Origin: Macrostomum lignano
Lineage: Eukaryota
NCBI GenBank assembly: GCA_002269645.1
Contig: NIVC01002037.1
Span: 124,001-188,000, forward strand
DNA: 64,000 nt
Direction: 5' to 3'
Of the stretch, positions 33,880 to 45,800 are shown piece by piece. The notes under the pieces are model-generated. The model was not told the DNA's origin. It saw only the letters and a list, made by a program, of their open reading frames with translations, and made no database searches. Every line of letters begins with the position of its first letter. Position 1 is the stretch's first letter. The translations under genes were made by a program, and so were the position numbers.

Positions 33880-36800
33880 ATGTCGGAGCAGTCGAGGAAC
33901 TCGCAAAAACAGCAGCAGCTAGCCTCAAGCGGCGTTGTTAGCTCGTCTGCTCAGCCGTTAGAGATCCGTCATTTTGAGCGGCAGAGTACGACTGGCAGGC
34001 AGCACAGAGCACACAGCAGTCAGTGCAGACGGAGCCGGTTTAACAGGTTGAGCCGGTTGAGCTGCTCAGCACCTACTGAAGTCGAAACGGTTGAGACGGC
34101 CAGCCAGGCGGGCGACTCGGAGACGAGCAGCGACAAGCAGGAGAATCAGCTGATGCGCCGGTTCAATCGGTTAACAAAGACCAGGATGAAGAGCGTCGGA
34201 CATATTCCAGAGTTTGGGCAGCCTAATGAGTCCAGAATGAGCGCAAAACTTCAAGAAGATGCCGGGTTAGAAGTCTCAGATGATACTGTAGAAGTAAGTC
34301 TGACGTCTCCAGCTAACTTGCTCACACTGCGACTGCGTTGTGGCTGTCGGTAAACGCAACAATCAATTAGTGAATCGTTCAAACCAATGATCATTTTCAG
34401 ACGAATTCAATTGGCAAGGAATCAACCGAATGCTCCAGCTCTTTCCAGTGCATGAACGACACCGAAATCAGGTGAGAGTTGCTCGGATATCTTCAGTTAA
34501 TACGGACTTATTTTAAACGTTAAATAGTTGGGTTCAATCACATAAAACTGATAAGAATTAAAACTCGAATTTTCCATAGTGCATATTTATCCAAATCAGC
34601 TGTCTTGTCCTAAAAAACAGATTTCATAAGTGACTGGCATTGAGCTACAAATTTTGACGGTAGCTTCTTGTAAGTTCGCGGACAATTTCGCGGCACCATC
34701 TCGTCAGCAAAAGAAACGCTGCATTTCGTTTTGTTCAACTAATTCGTATTTTTACACAGTGGGCTGGCGGGTCTCTTGCAAAAGGTGCTGCATCAAGTTT
34801 AGAGTAGCTTTTGTGGAGGCTGTGATAGAGGTCGCCTATAAGATCATCAAATACCGTTTTGTTGGTGCCTTGTGGCATGGAGCTGCTATTTCATGCAGCT
34901 TCCCAACTTCCTAAAATCTACATCAAAGACTAAAGTATAATTCCTAAATAATATTATATGAGCTTGTCAAGATGGCGCGCTTTTGAATCTATAGAAGTGG
35001 AGGATTAACTTATTTTTTCTACTATTTGTTTAGCTATGACGTGCAGTTGAAATCTAAACCTAACCTTTTTGTTAAAAATTTTCTTTTAAAAAACAGTCAA
35101 TAAGCCCAATACTCGTCACAAAGTTAAGTCTGATCTCAGTGTCAAAACCTGCACTTCACAGAACGTTCTCCAGCGAACAAGCGGGCCTAAGCCTGCCTAA
35201 GCTGAAGACCAAGCTAAAGCTCAATCAAGTGCAGCGCGCTCACCTGAAGGAGCGCATCAGCGACCTTGAGGGAAACATTTCGACGCGTACAGATTCAAAG
35301 GACACAATATCCATGTCGGGCGGGAACACATCCTGCAAAATCGGGGACGATCAGTTCTGCGATTTTACCATCGAGGTGGCCGTGTACACCGAGTCACCGC
35401 CGGCCGATAAAACGCTGTCAGACGAAAATGAAGACATGCAGCAGACGCTGACAGCAAAGCCTAACCAAGGAGAGGGTGAAACGGAATCCACCGATGCTCT
35501 GCAAAACCTGTCTGACGATCAGGCCAAGAGGCAGTCACGAGAACACTCCCTGTCTCTAACTGAGGCGGCAACCGCCGGCTCATCGTCCAGAGAAAACTCG
35601 GCTCCGTCGAAAGAGTCAAAAAATGAAGCAAAGAGATGCAGCAAAGTCTCGAAGAATGAGACAGATGAGGCTGGAGACGATTCTTGCCAGGAAACCAAAG
35701 ATGCTGACTCACCAACTACAAGCCTGCAGAAGCTGTCGGAAAAGCGTTCAAGCAAGCTGTCCCGTGAATTTGACGGCAATCTGGAAGAAAGCGACGAAAA
35801 ATCAAAAGAGGAGCAAAGCGATCCTGCGTGTCGAGGCTCAAAACGGGCCTCGCTTAGTCGATCAAGCAGAAGTTCGAAAAAAAGCACTGACATCTTCGAC
35901 CAGGAAAAGCCACGAAAAGGGTCGGGAAATTCTGAGAAGCTGGTAGAAAGGTTCAGCAGACTCTCGCAGAGTATAGTTGAATGCGCGAAATCGAAGACAG
36001 GCGGCCGAGCTTCGAAAGAGCAGCTGCGCCGGACAGTGGACGGAAAAGACATACGAAGTTCGATCGCGTCCAGCAGGTCCAGTCAGCATTCTCAAGACCG
36101 CCAGTCCAGTGAGCGCCAAAGCAAGGCGTCAAGCGATAAAGTCGAGGATACAGAGAACAAAGCAACGCGAACATCTCGGGAAAGACTATCGGATCAGTCA
36201 GATGACCAACAGAAGCGACGTTCAAAAGCTTCCGTGCAACAATCTGAATACGACCCAAACGTACCATCCAGGGACGACTTGTCATCAGATTCGGGTTCTA
36301 AAAAAGTTCAGAGAATGGGAAAAGAAAACGAAAATCAACAGTATCGCGAAAATCGGTCGAACAGTCAAGCGAAAAAGGTTCTATTGCGGAAAATGAAGAC
36401 GAGCTTGAAAAGTCCAGAACAACGGCGACAGAGGCTAAAGAAACTGAACCTAGGAAGTCTCGTAGGTCGTCTGATCGATCAAGCAAGCGTTCGAATGATG
36501 AAGACCATACTGATGCCGCGAAAAGTCGTAAGTCCGATCTGGAGCCTACCGTTGCAAAGAGGAGGGCATCAAAGGAGTCGCTCAAATCGGAAGAGCGGTC
36601 AAGGTCAAGCAAGCACTCGAAAGACGATGATAATAATGAAGTTGAAAAGCGTCGCAGGTTGTCACGGGAATCCGCAAGGAAGTTGTCCGAACCTCTTAGA
36701 AGAGCCTCAAATGAGTTGCGCAGGTCGCACGATCGATCAAGCAAGCATTCGAATGACGAATCAGCTAGGGATACAACTGAGCAGAAGAGAGCATCAATAG

Positions 36801-42800: not shown

Positions 42801-45800
42801 GTCGCCCATCGTTTATCGAGTTAGATGGGCCATCTAGCTCAAGAATATTCAACGAGATGGATCAGAAGCAGATTCTCGAGATGCAGCAGCAAGCAGATTC
42901 TATGCAGGAGTCGAATGAAGATGAAAATGACGACGACGATGCCGCTTTGAACGGAAACGAAGAAGAACCTCAGTCGAAAACCGAAGTGCCCGAAAGAAAA
43001 AGTTCCGAGACGCCTAGTTTCGCCCAGAATGAAGGCCCATCCAAGAACACAATGACAAAACCATCTATCATCACAGCTGATGGACCGTCTACTTCACTTG
43101 CCGGTTCTGGCTCAGAGACTACGGAGGACGGCAATAACGAAGCGTCAAAGGCAAAGCGTTTATCACAGAGCTCCGGTAGTAGTTCCAAGTCCGCTACAGA
43201 GGCTGAACTGGAACATAAGATGCATCAAATTGATGCGCAACTAACCTCACGAGGACAGGACGGACAGGACGAAAAGGAAAGCCTCCGGAATGAAGAGTCA
43301 CTTTCGCAAGATCAGTCAGGTACTGTTTCTGAAAAGGTGGTAGAGAGACAATCTACCGGCGGTGCGTCTAGATCTTCTCGTCAGTCTGACAAAGCTGACA
43401 AGCTGAGACGATCGTCGAGGACTTCAATTGTTTCGACCGAAGAAGTCTTAACTGCTACCAGAGAGGCTAAAGAGGAAAACCCTCTCATCAGAGAAGAACG
43501 AAAGTCAGATGGCTCTGTTGCCATCGCTTCAACTGACGATGTGCTAAAGCAGTCCAGAGAGGCCGACAGGAAGAGAGCGTCTCTTGCTTCTAGGAAAGCG
43601 AGCCAAAAATCAGAGGACCCCGAAGAAACCACCTTGTCAGCCGAAATGCGCGATAAAAGATCATCGCTACCTGAGAGGGGCATTTGTTCTTCTGTAATAA
43701 CTGCCGATGGGCCATCCAAGTCACTGGCCGGCAGTGTTCAAGACATGGATGATAATCGATCCAGAGATTTGTCTTTCAACGGTCTGAATGTTGAGAGGAG
43801 CTCCAAGGCTTCAGTCTCACAATCAGAAGGCCGACAGAGTAAAAGAGGCTCATCAATTGTTAGTCAAACCGACCGGAAGAGAGATTCTGAGACTCAAGAC
43901 CATCCTAAAGTCCCGCCAGAGGTGCCGATAAATCAGACCGGTACTTTCAATGGCGTAGTTTACATGTGCGAATCGACTACCTCGGAGGTAGTATCGAAGA
44001 AAGAGCAAAAATCAGCTCCAAAAGAAGAGTCGGACGACGACAATGAATCGGCTGATCGTTGCCAGGACGATGCAAAAGAGGAGGCTTTGGCTGAAGATGA
44101 TCGGGAGTCCAACGACGGCAAAAATGAGGCAGCGTCGAAGAGATCACAAAGTAGTAAAAAACAATCCTCAGTTCAAGATGAAGGAGAAGAAAACCCAGAG
44201 TCGCATGATCGTAGAGATTCGGAAAAAGAGGAGGAAGATGCAGCCGAAGCAGACTTCAACGACGATCCTATGAAACCCCATGAAGGAGGTGATCCTTTGA
44301 ATATACCGTCACGTCTAGAACCGGCCGCTGAAGGAAGAGTCTCTCAACAAGTTGGTGGCATTTCTTCCTCAGACACCGCTGGACCGGCGTCTGCACAGAC
44401 TTTGGATCCGAACGAATTGCAAGAGCAAGACTCGTCTGATTTGTGCGCGGAGGTTGAAATGCCATCGAAGCTAAATACTGATGGCGGAAAACAGAAGGGT
44501 AAAAACAAAACTGAACAACGTCCGTCGACTGCTTCGCTACCCTCGTCAGGTCGGATTAGGCAAGCTAGCGGGCAGAGAACGTCGGAGATTCGCTTATCGT
44601 TAGCAGAGAACGGCCGGGTCAGCTCCGATCGAAAATCAGACGTTGATAATAAAGCAAAGGTAAAGGTATTCTTGACTGATGTGAGGTGTTGGTGTTGACA
44701 TCCGTGGGTGTTGACAAGGGGGTTGTAGCCTAGTGGTTAGAACGTCGGACGTACGACTTGAAGGTCGGGTGTTCGATTCCCGATCTCACTGGAACGATTT
44801 GTGTCCGTGAACAAGACACTTGACTCTGCATTGCTTCAGTTCACCCAGTTGTAAATTGGGTATCAGCATTAGCTGGGGTAATTGAGGGTTTGACCCCCCC
44901 CCAGTCCTTGGACTGAACAGCCGTACGCGCACAGCCTTAAGATTCGCCGCGCAATAGCTGCGGCTGAGCTGTCGGTTGCACATCTAGCCAAATTGAAGCA
45001 GGTACAATCAATTAAAATTATTATTGTGGGTGTTGAGATATCGCAAATGCATCCAAGTAAAGTTTCAAGAGTTACCAATGCATTTATATGAGGGTTGGAG
45101 TGCCGCTAATACATCCGTGTGTGGGTGGGAGTGTCCTCTACCAATGCATCGACGCATGTTGAAGTGTTTTCAGTACAAACCACGCGTGTACGTTGAATTA
45201 TCGCTATTGCGGACTTGTTATTTCAATGGTCTCGTTCGATACAAAAATACATCTAAGAATAGAGTACTGGAAGACGGTTAGGTATATAGTCGTAATGTAA
45301 GTTTTACTATATACTACTATTATACTACTAATAGATACAAAGTGTCCCGAAATTGAAGGATCCTCAGTCGCAGGGCGGCTCAGTTAGCGGAACCCAGCGC
45401 GACCAGCGCGTCGAGTCGCTTATCGGTCGGTTCCGCGAAGCGGCCCAAGAGTGCGCCAACGTGCGCCTAGACAGGGAGGCGCTGCGACGCGAACTGGAGG
45501 CAACCAAATTCGATCTTCGCAGAGCGACCGCCGAGGCGCAGGAGCGTCGAACGGAACTGTCTATGGCTCGACGAGAAGTTGAACTACGCGACGAAAGACT
45601 TCGACAGCAGGCGGCAGTTCAGGTTAGGCTTTCAGATGATCAAATCAACGCACATTATTGTCAAGGCACTGGAAATTTTTAGGGCAACAAGTAGACTTGA
45701 TTACAGGGGGCATTACAGAGAGCGCTTGAGGCCCCAGCTTAGCGGTTAAGACCAGCTAAATGCTTAGAAACCGGTCTCGGTCTAATGTGAACGTTTAAAT

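What the first reader, a model, noticed from the sequence alone, without database searches (positions are those of the whole stretch)
35097..44659. Giant 9.5-kb exon encoding a block-charged polyampholyte with dozens of RRxS motifs
About 3,190 aa with almost no hydrophobic core. Basic Ser-rich blocks (RRASKDSRKS, RSSKRS) alternate with acidic blocks (DDNDE, DEDNEE). RRAS/RRSS/RKSS, the PKA consensus, recurs in nearly every repeat. No signal peptide is visible, so it is probably intracellular. Attached to a coiled-coil C-terminus, it could be a phosphorylation-switchable spacer, spring or condensate scaffold. An ORF of this length with internal duplications indicates maintained coding function.
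Basis: partly seen in the sequence, partly recalled or inferred. Interest (0 to 1): 0.7.

Follow-up and report, generated by a model that had tools for sequence, protein, structure and literature searches.

The report
Giant repeat-rich disordered exon, flatworm gene
This is a real 9.5-kb protein-coding exon of a gene found only in Macrostomum flatworms; it encodes about 3,170 residues of floppy, serine-rich, highly charged protein built largely from some 31 tandem 44-residue units, but in this copy one missing base splits the reading frame, and its function is untested.

Summary
The window comes from Macrostomum lignano. Positions 35162-44659 are exon 3 of a six-exon gene (ATG 33880, stop 48418-48420). 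The conceptual product is about 3,862 aa.

The exon product has 19% Ser and 42% charged residues, with net charge near zero. It has no signal peptide, no membrane segment and no Pfam domain. About 31-36 tandem 42-45-aa units carry conserved serines and end in an acidic D/N tail. There are 32 RRxS motifs against 6.4 expected.

Three corrections apply:
- The frame-compatible acceptor is at 35161/35162, not 35097.
- This copy lacks 1 nt at 36302, so it reads as two ORFs, not one.
- Charge segregation is modest (kappa 0.19 against 0.15), and only 18 of 31 units carry RRxS.

A sister copy (GenBank NIVC01000230.1) is open across the frameshift site. Its annotation, which is derived from RNA-seq, calls a 3,242-aa protein there. 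Between repeat units omega is about 0.27, and the other coding indels are multiples of three, so the sequence is maintained as coding.

The exon is an expanded version of a 393-nt exon in a tandem paralog that shares the helical C-terminus. The phospho-switch idea is plausible but untested. This is an uncharacterised member of a known kind of protein, of moderate to low interest.

The parts
33880..34293 (+). Exon 1. It starts with ATG (MSEQSRNSQ...), encodes 138 aa and has the donor GAA|gtaagt.
   Evidence: It matches P0001 residues 1-138 exactly. The sequence is shown. Against the sister copy, dN = 0 and dS = 0.023.
34401..34471 (+). Exon 2, 71 nt. It ends with the two bases AG of a split codon, and its donor is gtgaga.
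   Evidence: It matches P0001 residues 139-162. The sequence is shown. Its phase fixes the acceptor of the giant exon.
35162..44659 (+). Giant exon 3, 9,498 nt. Its product is about 3,166 aa once the missing base is allowed for.
   Evidence: The acceptor is cacag|A at 35161/35162 and the donor is AAG|gtaaag. There are 0 stops against 152 expected.
36298..36312 (+). Frameshift site. The window reads TCTAAAAAAGTTCAG, and the sister copy reads TCTAAGAAAAGTTCAG. The window therefore has a 1-nt deletion at 36302 that moves the coding frame from frame 0 to frame 2.
   Evidence: Three-frame translation. Pairwise alignments to L002.
36518..41476 (+). Tandem array of about 36 units of 42-45 aa, 31 of them full length. 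The consensus is E.PRR.SRES..K.S..Q.RASK.SRKS..(..)RSSK.S.DDDND.
   Evidence: Iterated hmmsearch and a MAFFT alignment of the units. Omega between units is 0.27. Tandem Repeats Finder gives periods of 132-135 and 273 nt.
38195..38311 (+). Short 39-nt (13-aa) acidic repeat, GDEDNEEIxEPRK, 3 copies.
   Evidence: Tandem Repeats Finder.
39491..39685 (+). Short 39-nt (13-aa) acidic repeat, GDEDNEEVEEPRK, 5 copies.
   Evidence: Tandem Repeats Finder. The sister copy matches a regular expression for this repeat at two positions, against four in the window.
42485..43723 (+). Non-repeat acidic, Ser-rich part of the exon. It holds four copies of the short motif S[VIF]I[TE]xDGPSxS.
   Evidence: Regular-expression search on the conceptual protein: full-length aa 2604, 2712, 2797 and 3006. 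The motifs are visible in the translation.
45374..45622 (+). Exon 4, 83 aa, helical. It is 58% identical to exon 23994-24209 of the upstream paralog.
   Evidence: An exhaustive HMMER search found only P0001 and P0004 as true relatives.
45901..46866 (+). Exon 5, 322 aa, with long helices. It ends at a GC donor, CAG|gcaagc.
   Evidence: AlphaFold2 gives helices at residues 2-133, 157-202 and 257-306. It is 82% identical to the paralog over the first 111 aa. The donor sequence is shown.
48031..48420 (+). Probable last exon (ETEKLRRLIDQQ...RRRSKHLQ, then a stop).
   Evidence: The acceptor is ttcag|GAG. It resembles, by eye only, the paralog's sequence after DYLFQ|. tblastn did not detect the match, so this part is inferred.
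20890..27411 (+). Upstream tandem paralog gene (P0004, 798 aa; P0006, PAA87437.1). It shares the helical exons. Its exon 3 is only 393 nt (22391-22783).
   Evidence: tblastn of P0004 against the window. The start of the giant exon aligns with the start of the paralog's exon 3 at 41% over 27 aa, E = 1e-5.

Best explanation
**Shown**
- The feature is exon 3 of a six-exon gene of Macrostomum lignano. No relative was found outside this genus.
- The gene is a tandem duplicate of a 798-aa helical (coiled-coil-type) protein gene that lies 7-13 kb upstream.
- In this duplicate a 393-nt exon has grown to 9.5 kb. Much of the growth came from tandem amplification of a 132-135-nt unit.
- The exon encodes about 3,170 residues of probably disordered, near-neutral polyampholyte.
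- It holds about 31-36 units of 44 aa. Each unit has a 36-residue Ser/Arg/Lys-rich part (net about +4.5) with eight conserved serine columns, followed by a D/N/E tail (net about -3).
- After the units come about 1,060 residues of acidic, Ser-rich sequence with four S-x-I-T-x-D-G-P-S motifs.
- The unit sequence and the reading frame are under purifying selection.
- Unit number differs by 10 (429 codons) between two paralogous genome copies.
- The copy in this window has a 1-nt deletion that splits the ORF. A sister copy is intact and is annotated from RNA-seq-derived transcripts as a 3,242-aa protein.

**Inferred**
- The helical C-terminus pairs or bundles the chains, so the product has long flexible arms.
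- The conserved R-R-x-S, R-x-S, S-x-x-S and S-x-x-D contexts make the arms substrates for multisite phosphorylation by basophilic kinases, then CK1-type or CK2-type kinases.
- That would turn a near-neutral polyampholyte into a strong polyanion and change its compaction and its binding to partners.
- Cellular location and partners are unknown.
For: - **Organism and gene.** The only close database hit is M. lignano A0A1I8I0D4 (P0001), which matches long stretches of the window exactly.
- **Syntenic sister copy.** L002 is NIVC01000230.1 of GCA_002269645.1. It is open across the frameshift site for at least 2,241 codons and carries a gene call of 3,242 aa. That GenBank annotation was built from RNA-seq transcripts plus TransDecoder (PMC5730564).
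- **Paralogous copies are expected.** M. lignano has about three copies of most loci, with about 1-2% SNPs between them (PMC10733133).
- **Coding.** There are 0 stops against 152 expected. Unit-to-unit omega is 0.27, against 0.9-1.2 in the shifted frames. Pooled between copies, 59 of 165 substitutions are synonymous against 36 expected, p = 3e-5.
- **Frame maintenance.** Indels that are not multiples of three number 1 in 7.7 kb of coding sequence and 3 in 0.88 kb of non-coding sequence, Fisher p = 0.004.
- **Repeat anatomy.**
- **Expansion from a small exon.**
- **Copy-number difference.**
- **Helical C-terminus.**
- **Low-confidence, mostly coil model of four units.**
- **Motif enrichment.**
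- **No signal peptide or membrane segment.**
Against: - This copy is frameshifted at 36302. It also has a young LTR retrotransposon 0.9 kb upstream of its ATG.
- In the 3' 4.5 kb, omega between the copies is 0.70, and the differences fall 17/18/18 over the three codon positions. This does not differ from neutral (p = 0.16). The absence of a stop after 53 substitutions is only mildly unlikely under neutrality (p = 0.12).
- Transcript evidence is indirect. It rests on the annotation of a sister copy, and RNA-seq reads multi-map between copies.
- There is no evidence at all on phosphorylation, oligomerisation, location or phenotype.
- The motif counts are inflated by recent duplication of near-identical units (273-nt period, 97% identity).
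- Kappa of 0.19 shows only modest charge segregation.
Confidence: 0.55

Rival explanations
1. The copy in this window is a decaying duplicate (a young pseudogene) in a recently polyploid genome. The 1-nt deletion is real. The locus makes at best a 707-aa N-terminal product with an out-of-frame tail, and function is carried by the intact sister copy or copies.
For: - There is a 1-nt deletion relative to L002 at 36302.
- The missing base is a G inside AAGAAAA. This is not a simple change in homopolymer length.
- An LTR element with 99.1% identical LTRs and a 5-bp target-site duplication sits 0.9 kb upstream of the ATG. The site is empty in L002.
- Omega is 0.70, with differences spread evenly over codon positions, in the 3' 4.5 kb.
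- M. lignano carries about three copies of most loci (PMC10733133).
Against: - Only one disabling lesion is found in 9.5 kb.
- All other coding indels are multiples of three, and all six exons have usable splice sites.
- Omega is 0.24-0.43 in the 5' part.
- A single-base gap is also what a long-read consensus error looks like.
Confidence: 0.35
2. The frameshift is an assembly or consensus error, and this copy encodes the full protein of about 3,862 aa.
For: - There is a single 1-nt gap in an A-rich stretch.
- Inserting one base gives ...SGSKKSSENGKRKRKST..., identical to the sister copy's reading.
- Everything else about the copy is intact.
- Published M. lignano assemblies are long-read based, and the authors themselves call them error-prone (PMC10733133; PMC5730564).
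Against: - Coding sequence shows no other 1-nt gaps against L002 over 7.7 kb, so the per-base indel error rate of the window appears low.
- The source assembly of the window is unknown.
Confidence: 0.4
3. The product works as a nuclear, RNA-associated or RNP-associated condensate scaffold, in the manner of Nopp140/Treacle or of the SR-related proteins SRRM2 and SON, rather than as a cytoplasmic spacer or spring.
For: - Acidic tails alternate with basic, Ser-rich stretches. RS/SR dipeptides are enriched (166 against 123), and SxxS even more (195 against 112).
- Basic clusters resemble nuclear localisation signals: GKRKRKS, EKRRRL and DRKKKP.
Against: - No LisH, SRP40_C, cwf21, RRM or other domain was found.
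- The acidic blocks here lack serine, unlike the CK2-type acidic serine clusters of Nopp140. The S..[DE] motif is in fact depleted (96 against 131).
- Location has not been tested.
Confidence: 0.2
4. It is not a gene. The open frame is a by-product of purine-rich tandem repeat DNA.
For: - The strand is A-rich (34% A, AT skew up to 0.37). Other frames and the antisense strand also hold ORFs of 150-350 aa.
Against: - There are 0 stops against 152 expected, and 48-351 in the other five frames.
- About 4 kb of the open frame is not repetitive.
- Omega is 0.27 only in the called frame.
- The exon has canonical splice sites in phase with its flanking exons, and the sister copy has a transcript-derived annotation.
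Confidence: 0.02

Closest known systems
Nopp140 (NOLC1) and Treacle: nucleolar and Cajal-body phosphoprotein scaffolds
   Same: [quoted passage not shown] That region is encoded in one big repetitive exon that varies in length between alleles (Drosophila Nopp140, bioRxiv 10.1101/513978).
- Both are rich in potential multisite Ser phosphorylation and are disordered.
   Different: - No LisH domain and no SRP40_C domain were found.
- The acidic blocks here are D/N/E without serine. The serines sit in the basic part, in R-R-x-S and S-x-x-S contexts.
- The dimerising part is a C-terminal set of long helices.
- There is no detectable sequence homology.
Giant-exon repeat proteins of vertebrates (AHNAK, the Ki-67 repeat exon, the giant ankyrin-B/G insert, SRRM2). 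This comparison rests on my own knowledge, plus PMC7401806 for giant ankyrin-B and PMC12457776 for the general rule that long internal exons carry tandem repeats and disorder.
   Same: - A single multi-kilobase internal exon encodes a disordered, charged, tandem-repeat region.
- That region is attached to a small folded or helical module.
- Repeat-number indels occur.
   Different: - The unit sequences are unrelated, and the unit here is shorter (44 aa).
- The gene is restricted to one lineage.
- None of the defining domains of those proteins is present.
The upstream tandem paralog (UniProt A0A1I8HS66, auto-named 'Golgin-84'; GenBank PAA87437.1, hypothetical protein BOX15_Mlig019362g1)
   Same: - The helical exons are true homologs: 58-82% identity in exons 4-5, in the same exon order.
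- The first residues of exon 3 also match.
   Different: - The paralog's exon 3 is 393 nt against 9,498 nt here.
- The paralog has a different N-terminus and a C-terminal exon (27109-27411) with no counterpart found downstream of this gene.

Membership tests
Formin. The UniProt name of the sister model P0001 is 'FH2 domain-containing protein'. | An FH2 domain (Pfam PF02181). | tested here: not met
   hmmscan of P0001 at E <= 1, and of the giant-exon pieces and several flanking ORFs at E <= 0.01, gave no FH2 hit and no hit of any kind for P0001. The automatic name is not supported by Pfam.
Golgin-84. This is the UniProt name of the paralog P0004. | A Golgin-84-type coiled coil (Pfam Golgin_A5) plus a C-terminal membrane anchor. 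| tested here: not met
   P0004 gave only sub-threshold PRIMA1 and Nuf2 hits. The window gene's conceptual product has no hydrophobic segment; the largest 19-residue Kyte-Doolittle mean is 1.25, in a poly-Ala run.
Nopp140 / NOLC1 | An N-terminal LisH domain and a C-terminal SRP40_C domain. | tested here: not met
   No Pfam hit in the exon 1 region, the giant exon, exon 5 or exon 6.
Nopp140 / NOLC1 | A central domain of alternating acidic serine clusters (CK2 sites) and basic stretches. | tested here: inconclusive
   The alternation is present with a 45-aa period. However, the acidic tails lack serine and the S..[DE] motif is depleted (96 against 131).
SR-related proteins (SRRM2 type) | A cwf21 domain or RRM plus long runs of RS dipeptides. 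| tested here: not met
   No domain was found. RS/SR dipeptides are only moderately enriched (166 against 123 +/- 10) and do not form runs.
Substrates of PKA and other basophilic kinases (a functional class, not a homology family) | An R-R-x-S/T consensus in an accessible region. | tested here: met
   There are 32 RRxS motifs against 6.4 expected. Serine columns 7 and 22 of the unit are 84% and 97% S/T, with K/R at the -2 and -3 positions. This shows the motif only.
Substrates of PKA and other basophilic kinases | Actual phosphorylation of those serines. | not testable with these tools
   This needs phosphoproteomics or in vitro kinase assays.
Block polyampholyte (strongly charge-segregated disordered region) | Kappa well above the well-mixed expectation. 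| tested here: inconclusive
   Kappa is 0.194 against 0.149 +/- 0.008 for shuffles. The excess is significant but small. Acidic clusters number 52 against 33, and basic blocks 26 against 24.
Coiled-coil protein | Long uninterrupted helices able to pair. | tested here: inconclusive
   The AlphaFold2 monomer model has helices of 132, 46 and 50 residues, with pLDDT around 90 for the longest. There are weak Pfam hits to coiled-coil families for the paralog's exon. Oligomerisation itself was not tested.

The most novel reading that the evidence does not exclude
After a tandem duplication, one duplicate turned a 130-residue exon into a disordered region of about 3,000 residues by amplifying a 44-residue module. 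That module is a kinase-addressable charge switch, with two basophilic sites followed by S-x-x-S relays and an acidic tail. The product would then carry some 250-300 conserved phospho-acceptor serines on a dimeric stalk. It would act as a graded, phosphorylation-set rheostat for compaction or condensation, and its length would still be changing between the subgenomes of a neopolyploid.
Probability: 0.12. Interest if true: 0.55.

Novelty: new member of a known kind. Interest (0 to 1): 0.3.

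Why it matters
If the protein is made and multiply phosphorylated, it would be a clean natural example of two things. The first is how a giant disordered region is born, since a paralog with the small ancestral-size exon sits next door. The second is how unit number drifts between the subgenomes of a recent polyploid. M. lignano has RNAi and transgenesis, so both could be tested.

As it stands, this is an uncharacterised, lineage-restricted gene that is already present in GenBank and UniProt as a predicted protein. 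Long internal exons that encode repetitive disordered sequence are a common pattern (PMC12457776).

Two practical points follow:
- The automatic UniProt names (FH2 domain-containing protein, Golgin-84) are not supported by Pfam.
- The UniProt model P0001 omits large parts of the exon.

Tried and rejected
1. **Pfam scans.** Scans of the giant-exon pieces, most flanking exons, P0001 and P0004 found nothing above threshold. A PDB sequence search of P0004 found nothing.
2. **First word-indexed homolog search.** The C-terminal 1,411 aa found only P0001.
3. **Second search.** The coiled-coil 408 aa found only P0002. This is a Logan contig from run SRR31628394, 58-62% identical, and closer to this gene than to the paralog. 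I take it to be an ortholog of exon 5 in a related species.
4. **Third search.** The N-terminal 700 aa returned nothing, not even P0001. This search was wasted.
5. **Exhaustive HMMER job.** It found P0001 and P0004, plus two spurious coiled-coil matches: P0003, which from its sequence looks like a secreted repeat protein with a signal peptide, and P0005, which its source names HigB.
6. **Exact-product look-ups.** P0001 is not on record. The source assembly of the window and the full 3,242-aa GenBank product therefore stay unidentified.
7. **A short intron instead of a frameshift.** I rejected this. The only GT...AG pair at the site spans 17 nt, and the sister copy simply has one more base.
8. 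**Irrelevant scans.** The bacterial promoter and terminator scan does not apply to a eukaryote. ARAGORN and Rfam found nothing in the window.
9. **Literature.** A search for the paralog's locus tag found no paper.

Full report
**What is in the sequence**

The window is eukaryotic. It holds a LINE ORF, an LTR retrotransposon and a proteasome AAA-ATPase exon.

The + strand between about 35.1 and 44.7 kb is open for very long stretches, but not as one ORF. A second frame is open only from 36302 and runs to 44698.

The acceptor at 35097 is not usable. Exon 2 (34401-34471) ends with two bases of a codon, and 35097 would then read AGT CAA TAA. The acceptor at 35161/35162 gives ...EIR|TFSSEQ. That is exactly what the only close database relative shows. 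The exon is therefore 35162-44659, or 9,498 nt.

**Chance**

From 36305 to 44659 there are 0 in-frame stops in 2,785 codons. Mononucleotide shuffles give 152 on average and never fewer than 119. The other five frames hold 48-351 stops. This is far beyond what the A-rich composition can explain.

**Organism and existing annotation**

The C-terminal part of the product hits one protein, Macrostomum lignano A0A1I8I0D4 (P0001). It is 2,263 aa and is auto-named 'FH2 domain-containing protein'. P0001 matches the window exactly over long stretches. However, it skips or garbles large parts of the exon, so it is an automated model from another assembly or copy.

The upstream neighbour gene, 20890-27411, is P0004/P0006 (A0A1I8HS66, auto-named 'Golgin-84'; PAA87437.1). 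Looking up P0006 returned L002, which is NIVC01000230.1:133507-164048 of GCA_002269645.1. L002 is syntenic with window 13.2-43.1 kb. It is 90-96% identical outside genes and 96-98.8% identical in the giant exon. It carries a gene call of 3,242 aa at the equivalent place.

M. lignano has about three paralogous copies of most loci, with 2.2% SNPs genome-wide and 1.1% in coding sequence (PMC10733133). The window and L002 fit that picture. The GenBank annotation of that assembly was derived from RNA-seq transcript assemblies with TransDecoder ORFs (PMC5730564). The sister copy's giant ORF therefore has indirect transcript support.

**The frameshift**

At window 36298-36312 the sister copy reads TCTAAGAAAAGTTCAG and the window reads TCTAAAAAAGTTCAG. 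One base is missing. In L002 a single frame is open from before the acceptor to the end of the fetched DNA: at least 2,241 codons, of which 2,208 lie in the exon part compared, with no stop.

With one base allowed for, the window reads ...SGSKKSSENGKRKRKST..., the same as L002. I cannot tell whether the deletion is real or a consensus error. I put the two at roughly equal odds.

**Gene model**

| Exon | Coordinates | Note |
|---|---|---|
| 1 | 33880-34293 | starts at the ATG |
| 2 | 34401-34471 | ends in a split codon |
| 3 | 35162-44659 | the giant exon |
| 4 | 45374-45622 | helical |
| 5 | 45901-46866 | helical; GC donor CAG\|gcaagc |
| 6 | 48031-48420 | inferred; ends in a stop |

- Exon 6 is inferred from a by-eye resemblance to the paralog's sequence after DYLFQ.
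- The conceptual product is 3,862 aa.
- As the window stands, the spliced message holds a 707-aa ORF and an open frame of 3,320 codons.

**Anatomy of the product**

The exon product is 3,166 aa. It is S 18.8, E 11.3, D 10.6, R 10.3 and K 9.7 %. The fraction of charged residues is 0.42 and the net charge per residue is -0.02. ILMFWYV make up 11%.

An iterated profile search finds about 36 units of 42-45 aa, 31 of them full length, between exon residues 453 and 2105 (window 36518-41476). Their consensus is E.PRR.SRES..K.S..Q.RASK.SRKS..(..)RSSK.S.DDDND.

- Eight alignment columns are at least 81% Ser/Thr: columns 7, 10, 22, 25, 28, 34, 35 and 38.
- The mean is 10.2 Ser+Thr per unit.
- Columns 1-36 carry about +4.5 net charge and the tail about -3.0.

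RRxS occurs 32 times against 6.4 expected. RRAS occurs 23 times against 0.3, [RK][RK]xS 73 times against 24, and SxxS 195 times against 112. S..[DE] is depleted, at 96 against 131. Only 18 of 31 units have RRxS, 27 of 31 have [RK][RK]x[ST], and all have RxS.

Kappa is 0.194 against 0.149 +/- 0.008 in shuffles. Acidic clusters are enriched (52 against 33), but strictly basic blocks are not (26 against 24). The protein is thus a periodic but only moderately segregated polyampholyte.

The last 1,060 or so residues of the exon are not repetitive. They are more acidic and somewhat more hydrophobic, and they contain four S[VIF]I[TE]xDGPSxS motifs.

AlphaFold2 on four units gives pLDDT 56 and pTM 0.14, mostly coil. 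On exon 5 it gives helices of 132, 46 and 50 residues, with pLDDT around 90 for the longest. No signal peptide or membrane segment is evident. There are no Pfam domains anywhere in the product or in P0001.

**Selection**

Between repeat units, Nei-Gojobori omega has a median of 0.27 in the called frame, against 1.19 and 0.92 in the shifted frames.

Between the window and L002:

| Region | Omega |
|---|---|
| Exon 1 | dN = 0, dS = 0.023 |
| 35163-36299 | 0.24 |
| 36305-36950 | 0.43 |
| Repeat part 36950-38311 | 0.43 |
| Ungapped 38561-43074 | 0.70 |

- In the last region the differences fall 17/18/18 over the codon positions. This does not differ from neutral (p = 0.16).
- Pooled, 59 of 165 substitutions are synonymous against 36 expected (p = 3e-5).
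- Indels in compared coding sequence are 1 nt (the frameshift), 3 nt, 6 nt and a net 429 codons of repeats.
- The 877 nt of intron and flanking sequence compared hold indels of 1, 1, 2 and 6 nt. For indels that are not multiples of three, Fisher p = 0.004.

The frame and the unit sequence have been maintained. Constraint on the non-repeat tail is weak.

**Origin**

The helical exons 4 and 5 have counterparts in the upstream paralog, at 58% and 82% identity. The first 27 residues after the acceptor of the giant exon align with the start of the paralog's 393-nt exon 3 (41% identity, E = 1e-5). The giant exon is therefore an expanded version of a small exon.

The window copy has 31 full units and the sister copy has 21. 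The window's exon is 1,286 nt longer, which is 429 codons minus the missing base. A 273-nt period at 97% identity marks recent duplications. Collapse of repeats in the other assembly cannot be excluded.

No relative outside Macrostomum was found. An exhaustive HMMER scan with exon 4 found only P0001 and P0004 plus two spurious matches. A Logan contig from run SRR31628394 carries a 58-62% identical exon 5 that is closer to this gene than to the paralog. This suggests that the duplication is older than that species split.

**How it probably works (inference)**

The helical tail would pair or bundle chains. The exon would then provide long flexible arms whose charge can be set by multisite phosphorylation. 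The conserved contexts are R-R-x-S and R-x-S (basophilic kinases such as PKA), S-x-x-S relays (CK1-type priming) and a serine next to the acidic tail (CK2-type). These assignments are established consensus rules quoted from my own knowledge. None was tested here.

Full modification would turn a near-neutral unit into a strong polyanion. Whether the result is a spacer, a spring or a condensate scaffold, and in which compartment, is open. A few basic clusters resemble nuclear localisation signals, which keeps a nuclear reading alive.

**Comparison with known systems**

[quoted passage not shown] It also resembles vertebrate giant-exon repeat proteins. It fails the domain tests for Nopp140, SR-related proteins, formins and golgin-84. 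Long internal exons rich in tandem repeats and disorder are a general pattern (PMC12457776).

**Verdict**

- This is a real, maintained, lineage-restricted giant exon encoding a periodic Ser-rich polyampholyte.
- The copy in this window has a 1-nt frameshift of uncertain reality.
- The phospho-switch reading is reasonable but unsupported by data.
- It is a new, uncharacterised member of a known kind, of moderate to low interest.

Noticed in passing
window 28431-32957 (+): A gypsy-type LTR retrotransposon with gag-pol ORFs at 28977-32608. Its 223-bp LTRs are 99.1% identical and it has a 5-bp target-site duplication, CTTAC. The sister copy L002 has the empty site with a single CTTAC. The element lies between the paralog's last exon and the giant gene's ATG, 0.9 kb upstream of the ATG.
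   Followed up: yes
window 20890-27411 (+): A tandem paralog gene (P0004, 798 aa; PAA87437.1). It shares the helical exons, but its exon 3 is only 393 nt. UniProt calls it 'Golgin-84' without Pfam support.
   Followed up: yes
window 40874-41932 (+): An in-frame stretch of 1,059 nt inside the giant exon is bounded by GT...AG. The UniProt model P0001 removes it as an intron. It could be an optional internal intron or a gene-model artefact.
   Followed up: partly
window about 42485, 42809, 43064 and 43691 (+): Four copies of the short motif S[VIF]I[TE]xDGPSxS (for example KPSVITVDGPSSSL) lie in the non-repeat tail of the exon. From memory, the hydrophobic core followed by an acidic residue recalls SUMO-interaction-type strand motifs. 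This was not tested.
   Followed up: no
window 46867-48030 (+): A probable GC-AG intron (CAG|gcaagc ... ttcag|GAG). It holds a long microsatellite at 46884-47990. A similar microsatellite lies in the paralog's intron at 22846-23781.
   Followed up: partly
window 4066-7767 (-): An uninterrupted 1,233-aa ORF of a non-LTR (LINE) retrotransposon. By eye, the translation looks like it carries endonuclease, reverse-transcriptase and RNase H regions.
   Followed up: no
window about 13200-17500 (+): A 26S proteasome regulatory AAA-ATPase gene. The exon at 14459-15190 hits Pfam AAA and Prot_ATP_ID_OB_C. The gene is syntenic in L002.
   Followed up: partly
window about 44716-44790 (+): A tRNA-like stretch (GGGGTTGTAGCCTAGTGGTTAGAACG...GGTTCGATTCCCGA) lies in the intron just after the giant exon. 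Neither ARAGORN nor Rfam calls it. It may be a tRNA-derived SINE fragment.
   Followed up: partly
window 53206-54355 and 57616-59179: Two minisatellite arrays are open in several frames on both strands (translations such as ESHRQ... and VVDCS.../TLQST...). They are probably non-coding.
   Followed up: no
L001 (Logan SRR31628394 contig, 908 nt): A genomic contig from an unidentified sample carries an exon 58-62% identical to exon 5 of this gene, with a similar acceptor context. It is probably an ortholog in another Macrostomum-like species.
   Followed up: partly
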